Source: Klebsormidium nitens (Eukaryota; Plantae; Klebsormidiophyceae). Taken from it: a stretch of DNA of 64,000 bases. The notes below the pieces were generated by a model. The model ran no database searches, was not told where the DNA came from, and saw only the letters and a list, made by a program, of their open reading frames with translations. The translations under genes were made by a program, and so were the position numbers. Within the stretch, counting starts at the first letter, position 1, and each line of letters opens with the position of its first letter. This document shows, one piece after another, positions 6,020 through 23,355 of this stretch. The stretch lies in the NCBI GenBank assembly GCA_000708835.1, contig DF237078.1:62001-126000 (forward strand), written 5' to 3'.

Positions 6020-6491
6020 ACACAATTATCTCTCTAGGTGTGATTAAAGAGTTATTCTTGCATCTAGTGTAGGACAATTGTAACTTGTTGGATACATTGG
6101 AGTAATATCCGACGACGTTTAATTGATTGCACAATGCGGAAGCATGAATTATAAAGTCGACGAGAAGCTTCAATCCCAGATGCCAATGCCAATGCCAGCA
6201 CGCTGCACGAGCTCCATGCCCCTGGGCCTGAGGCTGCAGTTTCGTGGAGTGATGGAGGGAGCACATAGCATTGGTTCAGGCGCCTCATCAGCTTATCACG
6301 AAATTCTCGACGTCAGTACCACCTTCGCTTTGCAAAGGATCTTAGCGGATCTACCACCGTCGCCAGCATCTTCAGCATTGGCCTGAGCAGTGCCCTATTG
6401 TGGCCGTGTGCCCCAGTCGGAGCGGCCGTTCTTCTGTTCCAGCATTCTGGTTTGATTTGTTGCATGAGCCCCCTTCTCTTCAGGAACCGCC

Positions 6492-8419
6492 ATGGCGTCT
6501 GATCCAGGCAGCCAGCCGGAGGCTTCTGCAAACGGGCAGCTCCAGACCCCCATTGAGGCTGCTTCGCAGAGCGCACAACTAGCACCTGTAGGCAAGCCCC
6601 CGACACATCGGCCACTTACCGTCCTCCGAGCTCTGCGTGGCGTCCTGATGCTCGCGCTGCTCGTCGTGTCGGCGTTCATCTTCCTCACCTCCTGCATCCC
6701 GATCTGGGCATTTCTCAGACTTCTCAAATGGAGCTGGGGCCGTGGCTTTGCCTCGCACCTGTTTGGCTACTGGCTCTCGATGTGGGTGCTGATGTTCGAG
6801 TACGTGAACGGGACCAAGCTGGTGTTCAGCGGGGAGAGCGTGCCACCCAAGGAGCGCGTGCTGATCATGTGCAACCACCTGACGGAAGTTGACTGGATGT
6901 ACCTCTGGTGCCTGGCGTATCGGAAGCAGAGCGTGGGGGCCGTTAAATACGCGCTCAAGGCGACCGTGCGGCACGCCCCCATCTTTGGTTGGGCGTTCCA
7001 CTGCATGGAGTTCCTGCTGCTCGAGAGGAAGTGGGAACTAGACAAGGACACCATCCGCACCGTCATGAGCTCGTTCCGCAACAGGAGGGATCCCCTGTGG
7101 GAGGTGGTCTTTCCGGAAGGCACCGACTTCAAGTGAGTGCCCCTGCCGCCGTGCTGGCGCTTTGTTGGAGCTGACCACCACCTCCTATTACATTCTGCCC
7201 AAGCCCATCAATGAATCACCACGATTTTTGATCTGCAGGTCTCGTGTAACTATCGTTTGCTTGTAAGGGGGGCGCCCTCTTGGTTTTTAAGTCTGTTTAT
7301 CTTACTTGCTTCAAGGAAGACATCATAAGCATCAGGAAGCATTGCACTCAAAGTCAGTCTCCCAAATCTATTTACCTGGAAGGATTACGGCTCTCGGTTC
7401 CAAGTCTTTGAAAGTTAAGTGATCGCATCATTACAAACCGCGTCCTGATTGATCTGCTCATTTATGGTTTCAACCGTTGCTTTCCAGCCAGAAGAAGAAG
7501 GAGAGGAGTCAGGCATACGCGCGTGAGCACAACCTGCCGGTGTTGGAACATTGCCTTCTCCCACGGGTAAAGGGATTCCATGCATGCCTTGAACCAGTAC
7601 GGGACGCTATTGATGCTGGTAAGACTTCGCCCGGTGGTCCATCTGACGTCAATTGGTGCTACCCCTGCAGTCGGGCTCCTTGTTAAACCAGCAGTGTTTG
7701 CTTCTTAAAACGAAAGTCATTCTCCTCTAAGGACAGCTACCAGCACTAAGTAAGAAGAGTATGTTCCGTGGTGTTGTGTGGCAGCCGATGGACTACAAAC
7801 AACTTGCAGGCGACGAGCAGATCTGATGCTCGTTCTTCTGTGCAGTATATGATCTGACAGTCGCGTATGTACCTCGGCCGCCGACGTTTGTGGACAATTT
7901 GTTCGGGCTGGACCCGGCGGAGGTGCACATCGATGTGAGACGGATTTTGCCCGCAGCGATCCCATCTAAAGAAGACGAAGCGAGCACGTGGATGTATGGG
8001 GTCTTCAAACGGAAGGATGAGATGGTAAGCACAACGGCTTTTCTGCAATCCAAGCCCACGTGAAGTGGTGGAGATGCGACTTCGAACTTCTCGTGCCCTT
8101 TCTGGTTTCAATTTTCGATGGGATTTGACCTCTCTGTTGCCACGATCTCCTTGAGATCGTCGCTCGCGTGCTAACGTTTCGGGTTCACTTACAGCTCGAA
8201 CAGTTCTACAAGAGGAATGCATTTCCATCGCGTCAGATTGACGAGGGGGAGATCTCAATGCTACAAGCAGTGGTGGGGTACGTTTTGTTCACGCTTAGCT
8301 CGGTAATTGCGATCTGGTTGCTTGTGACGAGCAGGGGGTTTTTCGCCTACGTAGTTCTAAGTGCTATCTTCTCAACAACGTTGGTCACTCTGAATTGGAT
8401 GCCAGGAGGCCGGCAATAA
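6492..8419 (+). CDS. LPAT4/5: 1-acyl-sn-glycerol-3-phosphate acyltransferase, LPAT4/LPAT5 class (4 exons)
   Basis: Acyltransferase motifs NHLTEVDW and FPEGTD are in exon 1 (6492-7132). Exon 2 has NLPVLEHCLLPRVKGF, exon 3 has YDLTVAY..FVDNLFGLDPAEVHI, and exon 4 (about 8195-8419) has C-terminal TM segments. An N-terminal TM segment is also present. Confidence 0.93.
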
Positions 8420-8639
8420 GTCCGATTTGATCCGGTGTTTATAAAGAAGTCCTCCTGTGAAGAGCCGATGCGTTTGGGGCGCTTCAGGTGTTTGTTGATA
8501 AGGTAATGGCGATGGTTCCGTGCAACCTTCAGATTGGGATTCGGGATCATTTTCCGATTTAGACCAAGTTGATTGGATTCAGTTAGTCGGATTGAGGTGT
8601 ATGCTGTGCTGCAAGGTGTCGGAAAACACTTAGGTGAAG

Positions 8640-9500: not shown

Positions 9501-12500
9501 CTACAGGAATTCCATCCCTTGCCGGCTCCTGTCATAGATGTCCTCGCTAACCTGGGCTAAGCCCGCTTGCTGCCGGAGGAACGCTATGTGCCACGTGAAT
9601 GTGGAGTACTCGTTCCCGATGAAAGTGCGCGCCCGCGAACACACCAGCTGGTCGATCTGGCCCTCCCTCATCGTCACCTCCCCCTCTAGCGTCCGCACGT
9701 GCGCTAGCTCCCACTTCGGGAAGTGGTCGTACAGGAACGCCACGGTGGGGTACCCCGCAGCGAGGAAAGCGTCCCTCGTCTCCTGGGTAGGCACATCCGT
9801 CGTAAGGTATAGCGTGCGCTCCGACGGCGGCATCTTCTTCACCAGGATCTGCACGATCTCATCCAGCGGCTTCACGATCCCCCAGTCCCGCTGGCTGTCC
9901 AGGAACTCCTGGCTGTGCCGCAGGTGGAAGCAGTCGAAGCTCTTGGAGGGGGACGCCTCCGCCACCGCGAGGCTGACGTGGTCGGCGATCTCAAGGGTCC
10001 GGTTGATGGGCACCACGGCGCGGTGGATCTGCTCGTTGAAGCGCGCCTGCAAGCCGAAACGATAACGAACGATGAGGAAAAACGCGGAGCCCGAGTGTCT
10101 TGGTAGATTCGAAGCAACCGCAACCGGCACGCCCTGGACATAGAAGGACGGTAAGACTTGTATGAGTAAGCGTTTCGAGTCACAAGCTCAGGAAGGGCAG
10201 TCTCTTCTGCACGCTGGGCACACTGCAAATGGTGGCTAAAAAGGACGAGAGACGTACCTCATATCTCACCAATAACAACCGAGCCTTCAGCGCAATCAGA
10301 AGTCGCTTCTGCCTTGCCACTCTGGCTGACACGGTGCTCGAAGCTTGAAACTTCTGGCGAACTTCAAATCACTCAAGCCACAGACGTGCGCTCACATGCT
10401 CGTCGGGGTCGTCGAACTTGTCGAAGCGCCGGAAGAGGCCGTGGAAGACCAGCAGCGGATCCTCATTGGCTCCGTACCACCCACGCAGCTCCGCCGGCGA
10501 CGCCCCATGCCACTCGCGCTCCGGCTTCACGATGACCGCGCGGTCGAGCCACGGCGCGGACGACGGGACGGGCGGGATGGCAACGTCCATCACCTGGGCG
10601 GACCAGGACGGCTGCTTTTGAAAAAGCTTGACGCAGAAGGAGGGACCTTTGTGCGCCGAGAAGCTATTGTGGCAGATGGCTCATGCTTGGAGCACGAAAA
10701 GCAGGTGTAAGTGACCAGTACTTTTGGAAATTGGACAGTTGCGTGCGACAAAGGAATACCTGAACGTTTGCCGGGTTAAAGGGCCGAGAGTAGCACTCGT
10801 ACGTCCGGCAGACCTTCGTTGAAACTATTGCTGTGCTCTACTCAGGATGGTGTTCTTGTGAAATGGGAATTGACGGTCGACATAACGTCCTTCCTGAGCC
10901 CGTTTCTTCCTCGCAACTTCGTTTCTCCAATCATTCACAGTGCGCACCTGTACGGGCAGGGTCTCCCACGAGGGGAACGCCTCCTCCAGGAAATGGTGCG
11001 GTTGCACCTCCGGGAACTCCGTTTCGAACCGCCCGACGTCGAAGAAGTAGTCCATCGGCACCGGAGACTCCTGCCGGTGCCGCCGGTGGAATCGCGGCAT
11101 GATGAGGGTGCGGTTCAAGACGCGCGCGATCGCGAGCGCGTTGCGGAACGCCTGCCGCTGGTTGTTGAGCCCGTTCTCTTCGATCGCATCGAAGTACGTG
11201 AGGTACTTGGCATCCGGGGCGGGTGCGGCGGGGGCCCATAGGCCAGCCTCGCGGAGCCGGTACCGCTTGGAGGCTGGGGCAACCCAATCGTTGAGCACTG
11301 CGATTGGGTCCGCGCCGGACGCCTGTCGCAGAGGGGAGATGGAGAAGCTCAGCGACGATGCCTGTGCGCTTTTGTCAATTAAGGTTGAAGCGGGGGACAT
11401 CAACGGAGCCGAGCGGCTCGCGATCAGAGTGCTGTGCCGCTAGCAATCGCCTCCGGCGTTTTGTAGCGCGTAACTGTTGGACGCTTTATCTCTTGTAGAT
11501 AAGAAAGCGAACCGCAAGTCTTTCGGTGAGTAGAGTTCGCACGTGGTGCATGCGGCGACCAGCGGCTCAGACCAGTATGCTTGCCGTTGGAAGAAGAACT
11601 GACACAACAGCATTGCTCCGTTCGCAAGAGCCATTCTAAGGAAATATCGGAAGATACTGCAACGTGAGGGACTTGGACCCAGAATTGTCCCCGCCATAAC
11701 CAAGGCATACATGTCACAGGCAAAGCTCTTACAATACCTTGATGCGACGAAGGGAGCACCAGGATTCCCAGCCCGCTCCCATGGCTGGCTGGAGTGTCCC
11801 CGTCTGCAAGAGCGACACGCTGCTGCTTGACCGCACGCAATTCCCGATGCATCGAATCGAACCGCCTCACCTGAGGCAGATGCTCTTCGAAGAAGTGCGG
11901 GCCGTTTGGGAACAGCGCGGGCTTGAGGGTGCCCCAGAGGAGCGACGTCCCGGCCTGCTTCAGCAGCTGGCTCAGCAGCGCCCCCTCGTCGGCTGCGGGA
12001 TCAGCGTCCAGCTCCTGCACCGGCAGAACGTACGGGGGTCAAGCAAGCCCTAGCAAGACCAATCTTTTCGGCTGCCTTTAAACCTCCCTGGAATCTCAAT
12101 ACGACTGTTCGAGCCAAGCGTCAACTCGTGTCAGGAAAGAATTCCTACTGGTCAATTTGAGTGCTCTGCTAGTTAGTTGAATAATCGTCTACAGTAGTTA
12201 GTTGGCTTACCGTCGGGCGATCAAAAAAAACGCACTACGGTTTTCTTCTTTGAAAACATGCTGCACCCATCTTGTGACTATAAACGGTAGAGATTATCAG
12301 GCAAGGGCCGGCGCAATGTTTTGCCGCACTCTCGTCCGGACTGCTCGCAACCTACCTTGAGCAGGTTCTCCCAGAACGCCACCACTGCCGCTGTCGGCGT
12401 CGAGTAGCTCACGCCCGCGCTCACATACGGATCCCACTCGCGGCCCGCACGCGTCTCCAGCGTCCCTTGCCGCGCATCGACCGGCACCTGCAGCTCGAAC

Positions 12501-15500
12501 TCCTTCGAGAAGCCCAGGAACGGGTCCCGCAACCACGCCACGTCATCCACGTCAGCAGCGACCACTCCGAACCCCTGCCGCAGCAACGAGAGCAGAGTCT
12601 GCACCCGCGCGCTCGAGTTGGGCGCGCCGCTGAACGGGACAATGGCCCCAACGCGTTTCGAAAGAGCGGTGGCGGCCTTCCCGGCGGCCGCGTCAACGGG
12701 AACTAGAACGAGGTGCCGGGCTGCGCCGGTCGTCTCGACGAGGCGCACGTAGTTGTCGAGCATCGGCGCGTTGGCGGCCGTCACGACCCCCAGCAAAAGG
12801 TTCCCCTCGGGGGTGGCCGCGGCGGCGAGGCCGGGCGAGCTGCGGGGACAAAGGAGGGGGCTATGAAGTTTGTAAACAACACACGAGATGAAACTTTGAA
12901 CATGGAGAAATGATTGCCGTTTGGAGTCACCGAAGAATGATCGAAGCGCGCACAACCTGTTCAATCAATGCGTCCTCCAACTTTTCGACCGCATTGAGAA
13001 GGTACAGGTTTTGTCAAGTGCTCCTTTGCCGCAGGTTGCACCTCCTCGGAACACCTTTTTAGGATCACAAACGATCGTTTGACTTCCCCACCTTTGCATC
13101 TCTTCCGCGGGGCTCTTTATCATGAGCGGTGTCGGGAGCAGCATCCTGCGCGTCTCCTCGTTCCCCAGCCGCGCAGCCACCGCATCTCCCGCCGGTTTCT
13201 GCTCTGCTCCTGCCCCTCGCGCCTTCTCCAGCTCGGCTTTCACTCGCTCGAGCTCCCCCCGGAGCTGCACCGTCTCTTGTGCTGCTTGCGCCGCGGCCTT
13301 GTCCGCCAAGTCCGTTTCGGACTCCGTGAAGGTGCCCTTGAACTCCTGGCTGATCGCGGGCTTGGGGTCCGCGTGGATGAAGAGGACGTGGCGGGGCACA
13401 TCTTCCGCCTTGTACTGCAGCGGGGGACAGGCGCTCGTTTTGAGGGGTGCAGCACGCTGATGCGGGAATGAGTAACTCACGAGGCCAGAGCTGAAACGAT
13501 TCGAAAGGACAAGCCGAAAATTGGATTCATTCCTGACGACGAGACGAGTTCGCCTTTTCGTTACACTCTTTCACAGAACAGGCTCTCCGCATGACCGCAG
13601 AACTACTTGACATGGTGTTTGCAACCCGGGTTGGGCCAACGAGCAAAGGCCGTACAGTCGCACAAGTCCGCATCAACAGATTGCACCACAGCCCAGGCGG
13701 CAAGCGCTCACCGGATAGGGCCCGTAGTTGCGGATCCAGTCGACGAGCTGCAGCAGGTGCACGTTCTGCCGGAAGCGCGGCTCGGGCCATGACTCGTGCA
13801 CCTCCTTAAGCATGGCCAGGTCGAACGGCCAGTGCTTCCACTCGCCTTCGCTGACCTCATCCACAAAGTCCAAAAAGGACGGGTCGCCAATATGGTACAG
13901 GGCGTTCCCGTTGATGTGCGCCCGGATCGCGCGCCCGATGAGCGCGCAGCCGCCACCTTCCTGCGGGATGCAGTCCCCCCGGTAGCTGCTGCCCTGCAAG
14001 CGGAGGGGGAACGAGGTTCCGCGTTGGCCGGATAAAGCTGGGGTCTCCAGCCATTGTCTCAGCCTCTACTGTCTGGTCCAAGTTACATGCTTGCAGCTCT
14101 CGTTCCAGCCAGATAGTGTACCATGTCAGTACGGTCAATGCGACATGGTCGAATGGGATCTTTCATTGGTTCAAAGGGCAACTGAGCTCTCACTCAAGTC
14201 AGTTGACGTGGAGACTGTCTCAAATCATTTGTTCGGATTGACTCAAGGGGGGTCGGCTGGAGTTTGGAACGATGATCTTGGTAGGCCGCTATGATGCTTG
14301 AATCTTTTGAGCTGCCCCTGCAACTCTCTTTCGACCACCCAATGATCAATTTTGCCAGTTGGATCGCTGTAGCCGCACGAGAGGTCCTCCCGAGAATCAC
14401 AAAAGAGGCTTACCTGAATCCAGTAAGGGCCAGATCGCCCCTTGGCCAACAGGTGCTCCAGCCAGTCGTTACGCTGAGGGATGTTGTCGGGCTCCATCCA
14501 GAAGAGGTGGCTGACGCCCGAGTTGGCCCACTCCTCCCCAGGCACGATCTTGAGCATCATGGTGTAGAACAGCTGGTTTGGTCCCCGCACCCACAGGTGG
14601 TTCTCCCTCTTCTTGTCATATGTATTGTCCACCCCCTACAAGAAAATCGGACGGGCATGGTATTGGGCCCCCTCACAGAGGATTTGAGATGCACATGTTC
14701 CAGGATGAGGCATGGGTGCCACATCAGCATGATAAGAGGTATGAAGGAGTGAACATCGATCACTTGCCTTTCTGCTGCAGGCTTGATAACGCGTTTGCCA
14801 CTCTGAAATAGCAAAGCTGCGAATCTCGCATTCCAGAGCTCTTGTCTTGAAAAATGGATTACTGACAAAGTTGATGGCTTCGCTAGTGCCTTGTACGTGT
14901 TCCAACTGAGCTATCTCCCTGACAGAGCTACCCTCTGCAGCTGCACCTTTGCAGGGGATGTGTCTCAAAAGCAACCCAAGGCGCAATGAAGTAATGAAGC
15001 TCACCGTAAGCGCTGCTGATGCGTAAGACACCTCTTTGAAGCACTTTTTGATACTGGCCAAGCCATTGATTGTGTTCTTCAAGGTGCCTTCCGATTCGCC
15101 TAGCTCCCCGTCTGTATAAAGCATCAGGTGTGCTAGCGACTTGGTCGTGTCAGACGAGCACGGAGTGACGGTCTCCCATCTTTCTAAGGCCGTGATTGTT
15201 TTTTGTAGCTGGTTGCCTGCAAGAGAAAACAGCTGATCGAGATCAGAAACCCACTCGAACTTGCCAGACAGAAATCAAGCTGCTCCATGGTTGTATGCCT
15301 TTTTAGGCTCTGAACATCATCTTGGCAGCTACTGCACCGGCTTGCATTGGGCGAGCAACCAGCTCCCTTTCACAAACGTATTCATTCACAGAACCTCTGT
15401 TACTTTGTTCACGTTGAGAATGAGCGCACACAGCGCGCAGCCACCGGATCCTTGCAGCCATCTAGAAGGAGCACCACACCTACCTGCAAAGACCATCACG

Positions 15501-15733
15501 ACGAGGATCTTGCCCGTGTCTCCAAACTCTGATAGGTCGGCCCTATCTAGCGCTGGCTTGCAGGGCAGCGCCACCTGGAGCGCCGCAGTGCTGATCAGGA
15601 CCACGGCAAGCAGGGTGATCATGCCCACCCTGCCGGCCAGGCTCCGAGGGAACCCCGCGATGTTCCGCACAACGTTCGACATGACTCGGGGTCGGGGACG
15701 GGACTTGGGGCCAAGCACGCCGCGGCGCTGCAT
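9501..15733 (-). CDS. Type II membrane multi-domain glycosyltransferase: TM + orphan GT-like domain + coiled linker + nucleotide-diphospho-sugar transferase (GT77-like) + O-fucosyltransferase-like; about 1017 aa, 10 exons
   Basis: Exons 15733-15484, 15216-15005, 14635-14414, 13993-13712, 13414-13092, 12839-12356, 12014-11871, 11322-10948, 10611-10396 and 10046-9501 are all GT-AG and phase-compatible (3054 nt by hand count). Motifs: TM GMITLLAVVLISTAALQVAL; GPNQLFY, FWMEPD, HINGNALY; ADVDDVAWLRDPF, KRYRLREAGLW; GLNNQRQ..ARVLNRTLIMPRF, HLR, LYLTTD, IDQLVCSRARTFIGNEYSTFT. Confidence 0.88.
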
Positions 15734-16403: not shown

Positions 16404-17021
16404 CCTGTCCTCAGCTAGGAGTGCAGAAATTGTGGCGGGTAAACTTTGAAAGGACTCAAAGAGAGATGATTGTCGCGAGTTCTTCATGACTTTTCAACTC
16501 ATGCAGTGACAAAACTTCAAGCAAGCGTGCATGACACTGACAGCACAGCGCCTGTTGTGCTTCTGCCGGGGCCGGAGCTGAGGAGTCCTGGCTGGAGAAG
16601 GTTGTGCTCGCCACAGCTAACCCGTTCTTGGACAAAAGTGGGACGGGTCACTTACCACAAGGGTTTCTAGGTTTTGGTGGCCATGACTCCAGCAATCGGT
16701 GCTCAAGTCGGCAGCCGAAGCAATCCTGAAGACCGTGAGAGAAGATTATCCTTGGTAAGGATGGTCATCTTGCCTGGATTTTGTGGTTTGTAGCTGACGG
16801 TTTGAGAGGTGATGTCTAACGGTCCTGCCGCTCTGCAGAGATGCCGTTGCAGTTCCACCTTCCTCCTAAATGACTCTAAAATTTCTGTCATTGGACTTTC
16901 AAGAAGAAATGCTGGTGGCGTCGTTCAATCAGCAGTTGTTGAGGCAGGCTGCACAGAGCTTTTCGTTGCAAACTGCTTTTCGACATGAGTGCTCAATGCT
17001 GCTACTTGGTTCTTTCAATTG

Positions 17022-20000
17022 ATGCAGAGACTCCACACGGAAGACATCGTTTGCGATCCAGAAAACCCGAGCGTGATCGGAGTCGTCACGCGAGTCCATA
17101 ACGACGAAGAGTTTGAGGAGGACGAGGACGAATACGAGGAGGATGACGCGCCGCTCGAGCCCGGCCAGGTGGAGGTCTGCTGGATCGGACAGCCAGAGAG
17201 TGCCTCAGACAGCAACCATGAGGAACCTGATAACCAAGAGATTGTGGACAGCAGCAAGCTCACGCTGGTCGACAGGTCTCTCATGCACGGAGATATTGTT
17301 GGCGTGTCGGCAAACCCCCTGGGCCAGTCAGGCACCGTAGTGGACGTTGACTTGTCGGTAGACCTCAAGCTCTCAAACGGCACGCTAATCCAAGATGTCT
17401 CGGCCAAGCGGCTGGGCCAGATTCGCAAGTTCAGCGTCGGCTGCTATGTCATGTACCAGCAGTGGCTTGGGAAGATTGAGGAGGTGCTGGACGACCTCGT
17501 CATCTGCTTTGAAGACGGGGGCGTGTGCGAAGTTAAGGACGTGGCATACCCGGTGGTGGTCCCAGTGGCCCTCTCAGCAGCCGATGATGAGAACATGTGC
17601 CCGTACTGGCCCGGCCAGGTGAGGGCATGCATCTCGATGCATGGCGTTCGACCTGCCTGCAGTCTCATGGCTGCTCATTACTTGCTTGCCTCTGTTAAGA
17701 CACTACGTCAGATCACGATATGTTTATTTTGGATCTCGTGACCTTGTTGAGCAAGTTTTTGCTTGCAGACTTAGCCAGGCGTTTGTCGTGCATGTCCCCA
17801 GCCTTGATGATGAGCAGTCGATGCCTGCAGGTTGTTCGCGCCTACAACCCAGGTTCCACCTTTCGAACGGCAAAGTGGTTGCAGGGCAGTTGGAGTCCAA
17901 ACAAGCAAACGGGAACTGTGAAAGAAGTCAAGCCCGGGTCTATCACCATAACCTGGCGCACCTGTGTCAAGGTATGCCTTGCTTTCATGATCTTCTTCCT
18001 GAAAGTCATCTGGGAAACCTCTATTGCAATGGAACAAGCAAGTGCCTGCAAACCTGCAGATTGGAGCAAGTCCGATGTTTATAAGCCTGAGGGCCAATCA
18101 ACAAATGGATGCATCTCCCACTGGTTATCAATTGGCTTACTCGTCCTTGATGCATCACCCTGACTTCTTCTGACTCACTTCGGCAACTGCAGATGCCAAG
18201 TGGCAACGGCGACCTGTTGAACCCGCCCACGGACGTCATTGCGGGGTCTGCCCTTACGCCTCTGACCTACTTCGCTTACACGCACTTCCAGCTCGGGGAC
18301 AGGTGCCTTGTGCCCCAAGGTGAGCAGTGCACCACTCAAGAGTCCCTGCCGAAACAAGGGTGGAGTTTATATTCAATCTAATCTGCGTGGGATTTCGTCT
18401 GGTGTACGGAGGGCTGTAAGGGCCTTGCTGACGACGATTTGTTGTTTCTAGCAGTAGCGTTCATAGATTCCTGGTGAGCGTGAACGCATTTGAAGGGACC
18501 GTCAAGCTGTTCGTTGCGTCGCCCGGTGGCACTGCTGCAAGCTCTATCACTTTCAAGTCAAACGCGACTGATGTTCTTTCTCTCCTTTCCAGATCTCCTT
18601 GCGGAGGGGGCCGAGGCGTCCCCTGCAGACGGCCCTGCTGACGAGTCTGAAGGGGCAGGTAAGGCGCCGGACACTGCCTCTCCCGCGTCTAGTTCCCCAC
18701 CCTCCGGGGCTGCCTCTTCCTCTGGCACTCCGGGCGCTGGTCCCGGCCAGGAAACTGATCACGGCCCGGCTGCTGAGGGAAAGGGGCGCAAGCGTGCGCA
18801 GAAGCGGGCACAGCAGCGCGAGCGGCGACGAGCCAAGAACCAGAAGGGGCCCGCGGCCAAGGAGAAGGTGAAGCTGCAGGCGGCGGCCGTGATTGTGAAC
18901 ACGAGGACGACGGTGGCGGTGCTGTGGCAGGACGGGAGCAAGGCGGAGGGGCTCAGGGGGGCGGACCTGTTCCCAGTGGAGGACCTGGGTGAGCAGTGGG
19001 TACCATCTTGAGGTTCGGCCTACTGATGACGTGGTAGTTGACGTTGTTTCTCTGTTGTGCTCGCTTGTTGAGGCTGGAGATTGTGACCTAGTCAGAAGAA
19101 GCAATTGTGCAATGTCGACCTCAGAGGAACTTGTTGCCAGAAGTGGCGTTCAAATTGTTGGCACAAGGCTTTGAGATGCCCAACGTATCCGTTCAGTTGT
19201 TGCTGATTTGCGAAATGCAAGGCGCTGAACCGGCTGCTTCTTCACTTTCTCCTTAACGCTACTTTCTCTGGTACAGGAGACTACGATTTCTGGCCCGAGG
19301 AGTACGTGGTTGAGCGCGAGCCGAGCGAGGAGGGCAAGGAGCGGCAGTGCCTGGTGAAGGCGGTGAACGCCAAGGAGCGGACCGCGGTCGTCAAGTGGCT
19401 GGAGGGCGAACTCGAGTATGAGCAGCCCCTGCGCTTCGGGCCCGAGGAAGTGGTCAGCGTGTATGAGCTGGCAGAGCATCCCGACTACGACTACAGGTGA
19501 GGGCAAGCACTGCTCACGATCTGCCCAGCACGAGTTTAGCTTGGTCAGAGTGTTTGCTTTACTTACAACGTTTGTTGACAGACTGATCACTTCCAGACAT
19601 TGCAGCGAAGCCTAGGCAACGTGGTTGCAAGGTGTCGTCCTGCCTCTTTCAGACTTAGACGCTTTAGCCAGCGATCGACTTCATGCGCTTGTCATAGGTT
19701 TCGGAAACTCCTGCCTTCTCTTTATGAAGCTTCTAGAGAACTCGTCAACGAGTAAGGCCAGGGTTCCTGCCGACCTTTTGTGCACACGATGACACGGCAA
19801 GCTTTCAGTTCGCCAACTCGGAACGCTTTGTTGCGGCCGCAGGTTGGGCGACGTGGTCACGCGCTTGCCCGGCGCCACGCGCGGCACCATCCTCAACCCC
19901 AGCGACGAAATCCCTCCCACTTCCGACACCAGCTCGAGCCCCGCCGCGCCACAGCTGGAGTACGTCGGCGAAATCGTAGCGCTCCGAGACGGCCTCATCA

Positions 20001-23000
20001 CGGTCGCGTGGGCGGACGGCGTGGTGTCGCGGGTCGGGCCGCAGAACGTTCTGGTGGCCAGCAGCGAGGACGACGGGGACGAGGAAGTGGAGGACGAGAG
20101 CTTCTACGGCTCCGACGAGGAGGATGCCGAGAGCTGGGAGACGCTCTCGGGGGACGGCAGCGAGCAGGAGGGGCCGCCACCGGAGGACCCGGCCAACGAG
20201 GTGGGCTGCTGGAATAGGCTTCGGTAGCACGCGTCGCTGGGTCTTGAAAATCCCTTTGCGCAAGGCACAAATGAGCGTTTCTTCAGCCATGGCAATAGGG
20301 TTTCTTTGTCTCGAGCGGTGAGCTCTAAGATTTCCTTTTCCGCTGCCTGCTTGGTGAAGCTATCTCCAGCAAGCTAGATCGAGGATTCACATAGCTGCTC
20401 TCATTTTGCCCCCTCGTCATTGTTAGCGGCAAGCATACGTCACTCGGTTCCCCTATCGCAGCAGCACGGGCCACACCCCTTCACACGATCTTTGCTCTGC
20501 AGGTGGTCCAGCGCTGGCAGCAGGCTGAGGCGACTTTCGCCGCGCTCGATGGCAGCGCTCCTCGTAGCATGGGCACGTCTCGTTTCGGAGAAGAGGCGCT
20601 GTGGACCGCTGACGACTTCCCGGCCCTCCCTGCCGCCAATCTGAACGGCTTGGCCGGACCCTCCGGCCAGCCACCAAACGTCGAAGCGATTCGGCCAGGG
20701 ATCGGGTCCCGGTACGAGCCGCCGCCGAACCCCTTGAGCGCATCGCCGGGCGCTCTTGGGCTGCCGGGAGCGGGGCTGCGCTTTTTGGGCCGGGTGGCGC
20801 GTGGGTGGCTCATGTATGGGGCGGAGGGGGTGAGTGTGTCGCAAGGGGCCCCGAGCCCGGATGCTGCCGGTACGGGGGCTGGAGGAGAAACGGCCGCAGA
20901 AGCAGAGAAGACGGAGGATGCTAATGCGGGGAGGGAAAACGAGGGGGGAGCGGCGGAGGCACGCAAAAGTGGGGCGGTGGAATTGGGAGCAGTGGCGTCA
21001 GATGAGGCGCCAGAGCCGTGCCTGGACGCTCCTCCGCTGAGCAGTGCACCAAGAATGGAAGTTGAAGCTCTGGCCACTTTGTCAGGTAGCGAGGCGTCAG
21101 TGCCCGTGGAACCCTCTGTCGATTCTGCTGCGACTGCAACAGCTGGGCCTGATTACCAGGGCGGGATCGAGATGAGCTGGCCGCTGACGAGGCCGACTCA
21201 GAGGACGGACGAGACGTCAGTGAGCGCACCTGGCGTGCCCGATCCGCGGTTGACCGAGAAGCAGGCGGCCGCGGTGCAGGCGGCGGGGGAGAAGCTGCGC
21301 GGGCTGAAGCACTTCGAGCTGCTGCCAACAGCGCCCGAGGACCACAAGTTCCTGGACCAAACGGGGCAGGTGCAAATCCTGCGCGGCGACGTTTTCGTTG
21401 CTCTTCAGCAGACTGAGACAAGGTTTACCTGTCAAACGGCATGGAAACGGTGGTTTCTGGCCCAGATCTTTCTTAGAGCCGCCTGAATATATGTACCCTA
21501 GCCGCCCAGTTCGCAGTGAAGAAAGAGCGGCGGTTCTCCGTCGCCAATATCTTTGCTTCAGATGGTCGAACTTTCCCATGTGTATTTAGATAGAGCTTTC
21601 GGCGCTACAACACGGATATTACAGTTGCTCTCATGGATCACCACTCTCTTCTTGGAGTACGCAGGTTCCTAGCCTCACTTTGAGCTTCCGACCTCTTTTC
21701 ACGCCGCCCAAAACCCCCCTCACTCACTGCGTGATTCTCATCCCGCCGCCCCTCCTGCAGGCGACCAACCCGCGGCGGTGGGCCAAGCGCATTCAGACGG
21801 AGTGGGCCGCCCTTGAAGCGAGTCTCCCCGACAGCATCTACCTCCAAGTCTACGAGGGCCGCATGGATCTGCTGCGCGCCGTGATCGTCGGAGCCGCGGG
21901 GACGCCGTACCACGACAACCTCTTCTTCTTCGACTTCCACTTCCCGCCCGAGTACCCCAACGCGCCGCCGCTCGCGCACTACCACTCGGGCGGCCTGCGC
22001 GTGAACCCCAACCTGTACGAGTCGGGCAAAGTGTGCCTCAGCCTGCTCAACACCTGGAACGGCAAGGGGACCGAGCTTTGGGACGCCACGTCGTCCATGC
22101 TGCAGGTACGCAGCCGCCGCTCTCAGTGCACGTGTGGAGAATGCCGTCTTTGGAGGTCGTGCTCTGCTCTTCCTGTCGCGAACGAGACAGGCACGGTGAA
22201 GATTTAGCACCTGCCTATTTTTGAGAACGATGGGATCTGAAGAGGTTGCCTGCCGAAAGGCAAAGATGCCCGTTTCTATCCTGCTAAGCCGATGTTCAAA
22301 GTGGGCCAGGAATGCCAGGAACGCAAGGGCGAAAGGTTTGCAAGCTTCGCAACGGCTTCCTAAAGGTTGTCCGCTTCTGTGACTCCCGCTTCTTACAGTG
22401 CCCTCTTCTTCGTCGTAAAAAAGCGGTCTCAGAGGTCCGTCCCGCCTTTCTCGCCTGCTTTGCTCTCTGTAGTCTTCTCGGATCCGCGGTACATTCCTCC
22501 ACGTGCTGACGTGGCCGCGTGTGGCTGCAGGTGCTCATCTCGCTGCAGGGCCTCGTGCTGGTGCCCAAGCCGTACTTCAACGAGGCCGGCTACGAGAAGC
22601 AGCAGGGCACCATCGAGGGCGAGAAGAACTCGCTGGTGTACAACGAGAGCGCGTACCTGCTCGTCTGCAAGTCCATGCAGTACCTCATCCGGCGGCCGCC
22701 GCAGGTGAGACTACTTGTACCTTGATTTTGTTTCAAAACGCTCTACAGGTGGCAAGTGAAGTCGAGAGCTTGAACCAAAGGCTAGAGCGGGTTCTGGACG
22801 CTTGTCGCTCTCGTGGAACTTAGTTTCCCTTTTCTAATAGAAGCGGTTTGAAAGTCGAGCTTACACGTGACATTGCAGCACATTCATAGTTGCTAGGCAA
22901 GTAAGCCCGCAGCATTGCAGCAGTTGTGCTTGCCCAAAGAACTTCGTTGATCAAGAGTTTTGAAATCAATGTCAAAGACAGCACATGATCTGCGTACGAA

Positions 23001-23355
23001 CGTATTGCTCATTCTGGTGCAGTATTTCGAGGAGCTGGTCCAGTGCTTCTACCGGCGCCGCGCCCCCGCCCTGTTGGGTGCTTTGGCAGCCTACCTGAAG
23101 GGCAAGCGGGTGGGCAGTCTGCCGGAGTGGAAAGAGGACGCCGGTTCTGCGCCGCAAACAGCGAGCACTTCCGAGAGTGAGGGAACCACTGCGGGGACGG
23201 TTTCTTACGAGGAGTCTGCAGATCCAGAGGAGCAAATACAGAGGAGCTTAGGCGACGGGGGCTGTTCGGTCGGTTTCAGGATAGTTCTGGGCAAGATGGC
23301 GCCCAAGTTGCAAACCCAATTGAGTGAACTGCTGGAGAAATCTTCAGATTCTTAG
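17022..23355 (+). CDS. UBC23/UBC24-like: Large E2/E3-hybrid ubiquitin-conjugating enzyme, UBE2O family (plant UBC23/UBC24-PHO2 class), about 10 exons
   Basis: The N-terminal exon has RLHTEDIV..IGVVTRV + acidic run + LVDRSLMHGDIV..GQSGTV. Middle exons have FAYTHFQLGDRC, DYDFWPEEYV and VSVYELAEHPDYDYRLGDVV. The UBC domain reads WAKRIQTEW..YEGRMDLLRAVIVGAAGTPYHDNLFFFD..NPNLYESGKVCLSLLNTW (catalytic Cys), then VLISLQGLVLVPKPYFNEAGY. Stop at 23355. The start is uncertain: ATG 17022, or an upstream phase-0 exon at about 16683-16754. Confidence 0.93.

What the first reader, a model, noticed from the sequence alone, without database searches (positions are those of the whole stretch)
9501..15733. Three different glycosyltransferase modules fused in one Golgi-type protein: a candidate single-chain glycan assembly line
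All ten exons splice in frame with canonical sites, so this is one gene of about 1017 aa rather than neighbouring genes. The order is cytosolic tail + TM, an orphan GT-A-like domain, a coiled-coil spacer (AAAQAAQETVQLRGELERVKAELEKARG), a GT77-like domain, then an O-fucosyltransferase-type GT-B domain with its GDP-sugar motifs (GLNNQ, HLR, TTD, DQ..C..FIG..STF) apparently intact. GT77 is the family of RG-II xylosyltransferases and extensin arabinosyltransferases. Land-plant Golgi GTs are nearly always single-domain, and I do not recall this triple architecture being described. Inference: sequential transfer of 2-3 sugars onto one acceptor, such as an algal wall polysaccharide or Hyp-linked glycan.
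Basis: partly seen in the sequence, partly recalled or inferred. Interest (0 to 1): 0.85.

Follow-up and report, generated by a model that had tools for sequence, protein, structure and literature searches.

The report
Three-module glycosyltransferase in a green alga
This is a real, expressed algal gene whose single membrane-anchored protein strings together three different sugar-transferring enzyme modules; the same rare three-part layout also occurs in a yeast, a chytrid fungus and other microbes, but nobody has shown what glycan it builds.

Summary
A minus-strand gene of ten exons (15733-9501) gives one open frame of 1011 aa, not about 1017. Spliced RNA contigs from four studies confirm all nine introns, and one contig spans all ten exons. 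The protein has a basic tail, one membrane anchor, a GT-A module with no Pfam family, a charged linker, a GT77 module and a POFUT-type O-FucT module.

The first module is a true GT-A fold, shown on a 35%-identical homolog (pLDDT 89.7; GT8 Z 14.3, XXYLT1 2e-7).

The layout is not unique. Colinear three-module homologs exist in Rhodotorula toruloides, the chytrid Quaeritorhiza and unnamed eukaryotes, including two intron-bearing metagenome contigs. The family is rare: 38 hits among 1.84 billion representatives. I found no paper on it.

A syntenic ortholog is intact, with dN/dS of 0.07 (N module), 0.22 (GT77) and 0.07 (O-FucT). The GT77 module keeps its DxD but has lost 17 of 42 family-conserved residues, so three active sites are not assured.

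Best reading: a secretory-pathway multi-step glycan assembler, fucose-type transfer first and alpha-linked extensions after. Acceptor, donors and location are untested.

The scan also noted two other multi-glycosyltransferase fusions elsewhere in this genome.

The parts
9501..15733 (-). Whole coding span of the gene: ATG at 15733, stop at 9503-9501, 10 exons, 1011 aa
   Evidence: Splice model and translation; all joints seen in RNA contigs of 4 runs, and one contig spans all exons
15484..15733 (-). Exon 1 (aa 1-83 plus 1 nt)
15005..15216 (-). Exon 2
14414..14635 (-). Exon 3
13712..13993 (-). Exon 4
   Evidence: used as query
13092..13414 (-). Exon 5
12356..12839 (-). Exon 6
   Evidence: PF03407 hit
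11871..12014 (-). Exon 7
10948..11322 (-). Exon 8
   Evidence: PF10250 hit
10396..10593 (-). Exon 9
9501..10046 (-). Exon 10 with stop codon
   Evidence: PF10250 hit
15623..15733 (-). Basic N-terminal tail, aa 1-37 (9 Arg/Lys, no acidic residue), presumed cytosolic
   Evidence: coordinates
15566..15622 (-). Single hydrophobic segment, aa 38-56; presumed type II signal anchor
   Evidence: Kyte-Doolittle mean 2.32, the only strong segment in the protein. Homologs also start with one hydrophobic segment
13361..15532 (-). Module 1, aa about 68-340 (introns included in the span): GT-A-fold domain with no Pfam family
   Evidence: No Pfam hit for the window's exons or for 30 family members. 35% identical to P0006 over 278 aa. 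The P0006 model has pLDDT 89.7 and matches GT-A structures. 42 of 47 family-conserved positions are kept. dN/dS is 0.072
14486..14494 (-). E-P-D, aa 202-204: module 1's counterpart of the DxD metal and nucleotide-sugar motif
   Evidence: E and D are invariant in 13 of 13 homologs. hhalign places it in register with the GT77 DLD, but that alignment is not significant
13895..13918 (-). HINGNALY, aa 254-261: the most conserved motif of module 1
   Evidence: H, N, G, N, A and Y are invariant in 13 of 13 homologs
13214..13297 (-). Charged Ala/Glu/Lys-rich stretch, aa 362-389, inside the linker (aa 346-430)
   Evidence: Present. The linker is not conserved among homologs. Coiled-coil formation was not tested
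11245..12838 (-). Module 2, aa 431-665 (introns included in the span): divergent GT77 domain
   Evidence: PF03407 at 29.2 bits. Colinear with the GT77 domains of homologs. A relative's model is a GT-A fold, UGGT Z 18.2. Only 25 of 42 conserved positions are kept. dN/dS is 0.218
12542..12553 (-). D-V-D-D, aa 526-529: DxD motif of the GT77 module, with one extra residue relative to homologs
11293..11295 (-). Leu649, where all 13 homologs and the close ortholog have His (HxNW motif)
   Evidence: RNA contigs show no other letter at this place
9504..11244 (-). Module 3, aa 666-1011 (introns included in the span): POFUT-type (PF10250) GT-B domain
   Evidence: Pfam. The family profile hits POFUT1 at 3e-9 and POFUT2 at 1.6e-8. 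25 of 29 conserved positions are kept. dN/dS is 0.071
11158..11172 (-). GLNNQ, aa 690-694: N-terminal nucleotide-sugar motif of PF10250 enzymes
9918..9926 (-). HLR, aa 871-873: the conserved Arg of the HxR(R)xD motif. The residues that follow are HSQE, not RGD
9597..9653 (-). DQLVC...FIGNEYSTF, aa 962-980: C-terminal PF10250 motif

Best explanation
The gene encodes one type II-anchored secretory-pathway protein of 1011 aa. Its luminal part carries three glycosyltransferase modules in a fixed order.

Module 1 is a GT-A module of an unclassified, GT8-like family. Its motifs are EPD and HINGNALY.

Module 2 is a GT77 GT-A module, also GT8-like, with a DxD motif.

Module 3 is a POFUT-type GT-B module (PF10250).

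I read it as a multi-step glycan assembler. The GT-B module would put a 6-deoxyhexose, most likely fucose from GDP-Fuc, on the acceptor. The retaining-type GT-A modules would then add alpha-linked sugars from UDP-donors to the same growing glycan, so that the intermediate never has to find a second enzyme.

The same layout occurs in a basidiomycete yeast, a chytrid, this alga and other protists. For that reason I favour a protein-linked or otherwise widely shared glycan over a lineage-specific wall polysaccharide.

Shown: one transcript; three modules; the GT-A fold of modules 1 and 2 on homologs; family conservation; purifying selection on all three modules.

Inferred: topology and location, donors, order of action, the acceptor, and that the weakened GT77 module is still catalytic.
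For: One spliced mRNA covers all modules. The open frame runs through ten exons. There is a single N-terminal hydrophobic anchor after a basic tail.

Pfam finds GT77 and O-FucT. The O-FucT family profile hits POFUT1 and POFUT2 structures at 3e-9 and 1.6e-8. The module 1 family model has pLDDT 89.7, with 409 Foldseek hits at E<=1e-3; every listed hit is GT-A. The best are XXYLT1, COLGALT1 and glycogenin, and by VIA a GT8 protein at Z 14.3, UGGT at 14.1 and LARGE1 at 13.9. The GT77 model of a green-lineage relative has pLDDT 86.3, with UGGT at Z 18.2, glycogenin at 16.6 and Gat1 at 16.5.

Colinear N + GT77 + O-FucT homologs at 25-28% identity include P0007 (chytrid), P0039 (Rhodotorula), P0008, P0028, P0029, P0038/P0053, P0041, P0040 and P0022. 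Two intron-bearing metagenome contigs, L002 and L004, carry the same layout.

The syntenic ortholog L001 has the same ten exons and an intact frame. Its dN/dS is 0.072, 0.218 and 0.071 for the three modules.

The two GT77 activities I could cite both act at or next to a fucose. RGXT puts alpha-1,3-Xyl on Fuc (PMC3522684). AgtA alpha-3-GalT extends the Skp1 glycan, which carries a Fuc-alpha-1,2-Gal unit (PMC8724618). Pathway glycosyltransferases are often fused in protists (PMC8724618).
Against: No activity, donor, acceptor or location was tested.

The GT77 module of this protein has lost 17 of 42 family-conserved residues. Among them are positions invariant in the homologs: N570 (VNGG becomes VSAG), Q602, H649 and N651. 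It is also under significantly weaker constraint than its neighbours (Fisher p = 0.004).

In the O-FucT module, the RGD that follows HLR in most clade members is HSQE here.

The folds were predicted on homologs, not on the window's own spliced protein, because that protein has no reference I could hand to the tool.

PF10250 enzymes also include rhamnosyltransferases, so fucose is only the most likely donor sugar.

The protein begins MQRR, a di-arginine of the kind that can retain type II proteins in the ER, so 'Golgi' is not assured.
Confidence: 0.55

Rival explanations
1. The enzyme is bifunctional and its middle module is a spacer. Modules 1 and 3 are the catalysts. In this lineage the GT77 module has become a non-catalytic scaffold or a carbohydrate- or acceptor-binding domain that holds the two active sites in register.
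For: GT77 keeps only 25 of 42 family-conserved positions, against 42 of 47 for module 1 and 25 of 29 for module 3. Its dN/dS of 0.218 is higher even than the linker's 0.144 and three times that of the flanking modules, with p = 0.004. His649 of the invariant HxNW motif is Leu in this genome. The Pfam score is only 29 bits, against 67-108 bits in homologs.
Against: dN/dS of 0.22 is still clear purifying selection. DxD, D551/R553 and the PNG motif are kept. Most substitutions are shared with the ortholog, and the VSAG variant also occurs in the distant relative L004. This looks more like a changed specificity fixed long ago than like decay. The ortholog keeps His649.
Confidence: 0.27
2. It synthesises or decorates an algal wall polysaccharide or a Hyp-linked extensin-type glycan. 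The protein sits in the Golgi and its GT77 module acts like RRA/XEG113 arabinosyltransferases or RGXT xylosyltransferases.
For: The GT77 domain is present. Plant GT77 members do this work (PMC3797821, PMC3522684). Plant PF10250 members include wall-polysaccharide enzymes (PMC7343896, title and abstract).
Against: The same three-module family occurs in Rhodotorula and a chytrid. By general knowledge these are not known to make extensins or pectin. The window protein sits on a long isolated branch with no detectable closeness to any characterised plant clade. Nothing here links it to Hyp or to a wall polymer.
Confidence: 0.15
3. It is a gene-model artefact: two or three neighbouring glycosyltransferase genes joined by chance in-frame splicing or by read-through.
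For: None found.
Against: Spliced contigs bridge every intron in four runs from four studies, and one contig spans all ten exons. The ortholog conserves all splice sites and the frame. Database homologs, most from short contigs, carry the same three modules in one chain.
Confidence: 0.02

Closest known systems
Uncharacterised homologs with the same layout: Rhodotorula toruloides 'Proteophosphoglycan ppg4' (P0039, 969 aa) and Quaeritorhiza haematococci HK102_004281 (P0007, 1200 aa)
   Same: They have the same three modules in the same order behind an N-terminal anchor, and align colinearly with the window protein.
   Different: Identity is only about 25-28%. They keep the canonical GT77 residues and the HxRRGD motif that the algal protein has changed. 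No function is known, and the 'ppg4' name looks like a mis-transfer.
LARGE1 / LARGE2 (GT8 xylosyltransferase + GT49 glucuronyltransferase; matriglycan polymerase)
   Same: It is a type II membrane protein with tandem glycosyltransferase modules in one chain. Its GT8 module is among the best structural matches of both GT-A modules here: 7ui6 at Z 13.9 and 15.2.
   Different: It has two modules, both GT-A, and no POFUT-type GT-B. There is no sequence similarity. Whether the algal protein polymerises anything is unknown.
Chlorovirus PBCV-1 A111/114R (and A064R)
   Same: It carries three transferase modules of about 300 aa in one polypeptide, with a fucosyltransferase as the last module. It is proposed to add three neighbouring sugars of one glycan (PMC7826918).
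   Different: It is viral. According to the paper its modules resemble GT8-like, chondroitin-polymerase-like and H. pylori alpha-1,3-FucT-like enzymes. I did not compare the sequences directly.
Dictyostelium Skp1 glycosylation enzymes PgtA and AgtA (GT77)
   Same: A fucose-adding step is followed by a GT77 alpha-galactosyltransferase on the same glycan. Enzymes of the pathway are often fused in protists (PMC8724618).
   Different: The pathway is cytoplasmic. PgtA is a di-glycosyltransferase that forms the Fuc-alpha-1,2-Gal-beta-1,3 disaccharide on Skp1, and AgtA is GT77 plus WD40. Neither has a POFUT-type domain or a membrane anchor.
Plant GT77 enzymes RGXT1-4, RRA1-3 and XEG113
   Same: They share the PF03407 domain. 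RGXT adds alpha-1,3-xylose to a fucose (PMC3522684).
   Different: They are single-module proteins. The clade relation to the algal module was not resolved here.
POFUT1 (GT65) and POFUT2 (GT68)
   Same: They share PF10250. The family profile matches their structures, including the N-terminal NQ motif, the HxR arginine and the C-terminal FxGxxxSTF motif.
   Different: By general knowledge they are soluble single-domain ER enzymes acting on folded EGF or TSR modules. The algal domain is the tail of a membrane-anchored three-module protein, and the residues after HLR are changed.

Membership tests
GT77 (Pfam PF03407 Nucleotid_trans) | Match to the family profile above the curated cut-off | tested here: met
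   Exon 6 scores 29.2 bits against a cut-off of 22, E 1.1e-6, over profile positions 54-132. Homologs score 67-108 bits.
GT77 (Pfam PF03407 Nucleotid_trans) | DxD motif followed by W/L-x-x-P-F | tested here: met
   DVDDVAWLRDPF at aa 526-537. D526 and D529 align with the invariant D residues of 13 homologs.
GT77 (Pfam PF03407 Nucleotid_trans) | The other residues conserved in this GT77 sub-family (GGSD..S..F, QSDAR, VNGG, EQ..LN, HxNW) | tested here: inconclusive
   25 of 42 are kept. N570S, Q602G, H649L, N651D and S496/D497 are lost, while D551, R553 and PNG are kept. Their catalytic roles are not known, because no GT77 structure was found by sequence.
GT77 (Pfam PF03407 Nucleotid_trans) | GT-A fold | tested here: met
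   Tested on the relative L004:11308-12207 (35% identical, same VSAG variant), not on the window protein. pLDDT is 86.3; UGGT Z 18.2 and glycogenin Z 16.6.
PF10250 O-FucT superfamily (GT65/GT68/GT106-like GT-B) | Match to the family profile above the curated cut-off | tested here: met
   Exon 8 scores 47.6 bits against a cut-off of 31.5, over profile 1-67. Exon 10 scores 30.8 bits over profile 174-320. The domain is split by introns and had to be scored in pieces.
PF10250 O-FucT superfamily (GT65/GT68/GT106-like GT-B) | Sequence motifs: G-x-N-N-Q near the start, the H-x-R arginine, and C-terminal D-Q..C..F-x-G-N..S-T-F | tested here: met
   GLNNQ at 690, HLR at 871 and DQLVC..FIGNEYSTF at 962-980. 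They align with the POFUT1/2 motifs in the profile search. The RGD after HLR is HSQE.
PF10250 O-FucT superfamily (GT65/GT68/GT106-like GT-B) | GDP-fucose (or another 6-deoxyhexose donor) transferase activity | not testable with these tools
   Needs an enzyme assay.
GT8 (Pfam PF01501), considered for module 1 | Sequence match to the family profile | tested here: not met
   No Pfam family matches the window's exons 1-5 or any of 30 family members at E<=1. There is no PDB relative by sequence.
GT8 (Pfam PF01501), considered for module 1 | GT-A fold closest to GT8-type retaining enzymes | tested here: met
   Tested on homolog P0006:40-325. A GT8 protein (3tzt) gives Z 14.3, UGGT 14.1, LARGE1 13.9, XXYLT1 13.8 and LgtC 13.5. 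Foldseek gives XXYLT1 at 2e-7. This means it works like, and is folded like, a GT8 enzyme; it is not a sequence member.
Single-chain multi-glycosyltransferases (LARGE, PgtA, A111/114R type) | Two or more glycosyltransferase catalytic domains in one translated polypeptide | tested here: met
   One open frame and one spliced transcript, with three glycosyltransferase-fold modules.
Single-chain multi-glycosyltransferases (LARGE, PgtA, A111/114R type) | Each module catalytically active on the same glycan | not testable with these tools
   Only indirect evidence: purifying selection on all modules, weaker on GT77.
Type II Golgi membrane glycosyltransferase | Short cytosolic tail, one N-terminal transmembrane segment, luminal catalytic part | tested here: met
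   The tail (aa 1-37) has 9 basic and 0 acidic residues. The only strong hydrophobic segment is aa 38-56.
Type II Golgi membrane glycosyltransferase | Golgi residence | not testable with these tools
   Needs localisation. An N-terminal MQRR makes ER retention possible.

The most novel reading that the evidence does not exclude
Module 1 founds a new, CAZy- and Pfam-unclassified GT-A glycosyltransferase family. The conserved N-module + GT77 + POFUT-type protein would then be a self-contained three-step enzyme that builds one defined fucose-based alpha-linked trisaccharide, or a repeat. That glycan would be shared by streptophyte algae, basidiomycete yeasts, chytrids and other protists, and has not yet been recognised.
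Probability: 0.3. Interest if true: 0.75.

Novelty: new variant of a known kind. Interest (0 to 1): 0.55.

Why it matters
Most eukaryotic secretory glycosyltransferases are single-module enzymes, and the order of sugar additions has to be worked out gene by gene. A conserved protein that fuses three modules points to three reactions that belong together, so it predicts a specific, still unknown glycan.

The family has a member in the genetically tractable yeast Rhodotorula toruloides, which makes that glycan directly findable by knock-out and glycomics.

The first module also marks a glycosyltransferase-fold family that Pfam does not hold. It occurs alone, in tandem and in this fusion.

For plant cell-wall evolution it shows that a streptophyte alga pairs GT77 with a fucosyltransferase-type domain in one chain. 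That fits the known habit of GT77 enzymes of acting on fucose.

Tried and rejected
1. I looked for the window's own full-length protein in the protein collections, to get a reference for folding. Only exon-sized fragments of relatives turned up (P0001 at 96%, P0002 at 94%). The alignment-seeded search (A1) gave 7 proteins, none of them the window's. I therefore did not fold or scan the spliced 1011-aa protein as a whole. It has no reference and I did not type it. Pfam was run exon by exon, folds were done on homologs, and comparisons with the spliced model were done in scripts.

2. I tested whether module 1 is a diverged duplicate of the GT77 module. hhalign gives probability 0.3%, so this is rejected at sequence level. 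Both are GT8-like by fold.

3. I tested whether module 1 belongs to a phage glycosyltransferase family, as suggested by the ESM Atlas feature and shape neighbours, which are phage hypothetical proteins. PHROGs gives only E 0.03-0.08, which is not significant.

4. The lead 'At3g56750-like domain' came from another note on this genome. The paper predicts At3g56750 to be a GT-B FucT-like protein, so it is not module 1.

5. A word-based search with Rhodotorula module 1 found only 3 proteins. This says little about the family's spread, because that tool needs shared 5-mers.

6. The N-domain tree leaves deep branches unresolved, and the window protein sits on a long branch. No donor lineage or transfer can be claimed.

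7. PDB sequence searches with the module 1 and GT77 profiles gave nothing meaningful.

Full report
THE GENE. The finding lies on the minus strand. Ten exons are joined by nine GT..AG introns into a 3036-nt frame of 1011 codons, with ATG at 15733 and stop at 9503-9501. An in-frame TGA directly precedes the ATG. All quoted motifs are present at aa 362-389, 690, 871, 912 and 962-980.

TRANSCRIPT EVIDENCE. Twenty public runs from eight studies hold 23-64% of the stretch's sampled words, about the exon share of the stretch. I laid contigs of four runs from four studies on window:9734-15733, which is 6000 letters. They show all nine joints at exactly the predicted positions (CT..AC on the plus strand). 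There are no base differences. Depth is 40-170 over exons and 0-6 over introns. In run X11 a single 3512-nt contig runs from 444 nt upstream of the ATG through exon 10. The runs are only guessed to be RNA, but intron-less joints cannot come from genomic DNA. Contigs cannot exclude minor isoforms.

MODULES BY SEQUENCE. The spliced protein has no reference, so I scanned Pfam exon by exon. Exon 6 matches PF03407 (GT77) at 29.2 bits (cut-off 22). Exons 8 and 10 match the two ends of PF10250 (O-FucT) at 47.6 and 30.8 bits (cut-off 31.5). Exons 1-5 match nothing. The N-terminus is a tail with nine basic and no acidic residues, followed by the protein's only strong hydrophobic segment at aa 38-56. 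This is the usual layout of a type II anchor.

THE FIRST MODULE AND THE FAMILY. An exhaustive HMMER search with exon 4 against 1.84 billion representative proteins found only 38 hits. Three of them are spurious bacterial repeat proteins. The nearest hits are exon-sized fragments of close relatives. The longer hits are the important ones. P0007 (1200 aa), P0008 (1248), P0038 (980), P0029 (958), P0028 (845) and P0010 (730, cut) each carry PF03407 and PF10250 after the region that matches exon 4. P0022 (1364) carries PF03407 in Pfam, and its O-FucT part was detected by phmmer. They align colinearly with my spliced model across all three modules at 25-28% identity. A second search added P0039, P0040 and P0041, and gave names. 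P0007 is a hypothetical protein of the chytrid Quaeritorhiza haematococci. P0039 is Rhodotorula toruloides 'Proteophosphoglycan ppg4'. The first module also occurs alone (P0006, P0009, P0034, P0037, P0024), in tandem (P0026, P0030) and with a Sushi domain (P0042). None of 30 members matches any Pfam family at E<=1. No solved structure is related by sequence.

FOLDS. I folded P0006:40-325, which is 35% identical to the window's module over 278 aa, with the family alignment A2. The result was pLDDT 89.7 and pTM 0.90. Foldseek gives 409 PDB matches at E<=1e-3. The 50 listed are all GT-A glycosyltransferases, led by XXYLT1 (2e-7), COLGALT1 and glycogenin. The Foldseek-independent search gives a GT8 protein at Z 14.3, UGGT at 14.1, LARGE1 at 13.9, XXYLT1 at 13.8 and LgtC at 13.5. 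Its invariant motifs are E-P-D, in the DxD place, and HINGNALY. A profile-profile comparison with the GT77 module is not significant (0.3%), so I cannot call it a duplicate. For the GT77 module I folded a single-exon green-lineage relative (L004:11308-12207, 35% identical). It gave pLDDT 86.3, with UGGT at Z 18.2, glycogenin at 16.6, Gat1 at 16.5 and LARGE1 at 15.2. The third module's family profile hits POFUT1 at 3e-9 and POFUT2 at 1.6e-8, aligning the NQ motif, the HxR arginine and the C-terminal FxGN..STF motif.

ARE ALL THREE MODULES INTACT? I aligned the spliced model with 13 homologs and took the positions conserved in at least 80% of them. The window protein keeps 42 of 47 in module 1 and 25 of 29 in module 3, but only 25 of 42 in GT77. 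Among the lost positions are several that are invariant in the homologs: VNGG has become VSAG, EQ..LN has become EG..LS, HxNW has become LNDW, and the GGSD..S..F block is gone. The DxD, D551/R553 and PNG are kept. In module 3 the arginine of HLR is kept, but the following RGD is HSQE. One sub-clade of the family has lost that arginine altogether.

SELECTION. The look-up of encoding contigs on fragment P0001 returned a 32-kb contig of a related alga, L001. It is syntenic with window 6.3-23.3 kb. It has the same ten exons with no indels, all splice sites, and an intact 1011-aa frame at 91.5% identity. Nei-Gojobori dN/dS is 0.072 for module 1, 0.144 for the linker, 0.218 for GT77 and 0.071 for module 3. 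GT77 differs from the other two modules with Fisher p = 0.004. All three modules are therefore under purifying selection, but the middle one is clearly less constrained. Most of its unusual residues are shared with the ortholog. The exception is position 649, where the ortholog has the consensus His and this genome has Leu.

OTHER GREEN-LINEAGE COPIES. Fragments P0005 and P0004 led to two intron-bearing contigs of one JGI metagenome, L002 and L004. tblastn with my model finds colinear pieces of all three modules on each. L004 shares the VSAG variant. The layout is thus multi-copy in at least one other intron-rich eukaryote. An N-domain tree places the window and its ortholog on a long isolated branch with unresolved deep nodes. 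Three-module proteins lie on both sides of the midpoint root. I claim no transfer or origin.

MECHANISM. Shown: one transcript, one frame, one anchor, three glycosyltransferase-fold modules, a conserved order, and constraint on all three. Inferred: a secretory-pathway enzyme that performs successive transfers on one glycan. I propose the order GT-B first, then GT77, then module 1. The reason is that RGXT, a characterised GT77 enzyme, puts alpha-1,3-xylose on the fucose of RG-II side chain A (PMC3522684). AgtA, another GT77 enzyme, extends the Skp1 glycan, which carries a Fuc-alpha-1,2-Gal unit (PMC8724618). Both GT-A modules resemble retaining GT8-type enzymes, so alpha-linked additions from UDP-sugars are the likeliest. 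The family occurs in a yeast and a chytrid as well as an alga. I therefore think a shared, probably protein-linked glycan is more likely than an alga-specific wall polymer or extensin-type Hyp-glycan, but nothing tests this. ER versus Golgi is open, since the protein begins MQRR. The main rival is that the GT77 module is now a non-catalytic spacer.

COMPARISON WITH WHAT IS KNOWN. Tandem glycosyltransferases in one chain are known. LARGE1 has two modules, one of them GT8. PgtA is a bifunctional Skp1 di-glycosyltransferase. Two chlorovirus PBCV-1 proteins have three transferase modules, and A111/114R ends in a fucosyltransferase (PMC7826918). A survey of early-diverging fungi lists GT77 alone or joined to GDP_Man_Dehyd or Branch domains, and does not list it with O-FucT (PMC8778642). 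Full-text searches for GT77 with O-fucosyltransferase, for PF03407 with PF10250, and for related terms found no description of this layout. That library misses many subscription papers. The family is in public databases with both Pfam domains precomputed. It is therefore catalogued as sequence, but not named, studied or widespread.

CONTEXT FROM THE SCAN. Earlier notes are unchecked. They call this genome Klebsormidium (s1-277608). They list two more multi-glycosyltransferase fusions elsewhere in it: GT31 + SUB1-like + GT25 (s1-351040), and At3g56750-like + GT77 (s1-316334). I checked only that At3g56750 is predicted to be a FucT-like GT-B protein. If those notes hold, fusing a GT77 or fucosyltransferase-type module to other transferases is a habit of this genome.

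VERDICT. The gene is a new variant of a known kind, the multi-module glycosyltransferase. It belongs to a rare conserved family whose first module is an unclassified GT-A family. Its middle module is weakened in this alga, and its product is unknown.

LIMITS. Folds were made on homologs. Pfam was run on exons. No raw reads were available. There are no assays.

Noticed in passing
window 11034-11054 and 11901-11923: In all four runs one further contig joins 11054 to 11901. The junction is non-canonical (TC..GG), only 21 nt fit on each side, and 255-nt loose ends are unlike the window. It is probably the transcript of a diverged paralog that shares short identical islands in exons 7 and 8, or else an assembly chimera.
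   Followed up: no
window 6344-8565 and 16676-23343; L001: The neighbourhood is syntenic with the related alga's contig L001. An acyltransferase (PF01553) gene lies below the glycosyltransferase gene and a UBE2O-like ubiquitin-conjugating gene lies above it.
   Followed up: partly
P0026, P0030, P0042, P0006, P0009 (proteins): The unclassified GT-A module also occurs alone, as two tandem copies in one protein, and joined to a Sushi domain in a EukProt protein. It behaves as a mobile glycosyltransferase module in its own right.
   Followed up: partly
P0013, P0032, P0036: Bacterial repeat proteins hit exon 4 only through repeats resembling 'VRAIRIKINGNIIYELG', which echo the HINGNALY motif. I judge these to be chance matches and not relatives.
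   Followed up: partly
window 15722-15733 and 9504-9515: The protein starts MQRR, with arginines at positions 3-4 as in ER-retention motifs of type II proteins. It ends MEFL; the ortholog also ends MEFL, and the distant homolog P0008 ends MSFL. Whether either end is a sorting signal is unknown.
   Followed up: no
L002 and L004 (JGI metagenome 3300060284): Two different intron-bearing contigs of one metagenome each encode a colinear three-module homolog (56% and 41% identical in exon 4). One unnamed eukaryote therefore carries at least two paralogs.
   Followed up: partly
window 10069-10424, 10641-10974, 11516-11899: Low-depth contigs (depth 4-6, against 40-170 over exons) cover parts of introns 9, 8 and 7. 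This is consistent with unspliced precursor RNA or a little DNA in the libraries.
   Followed up: no
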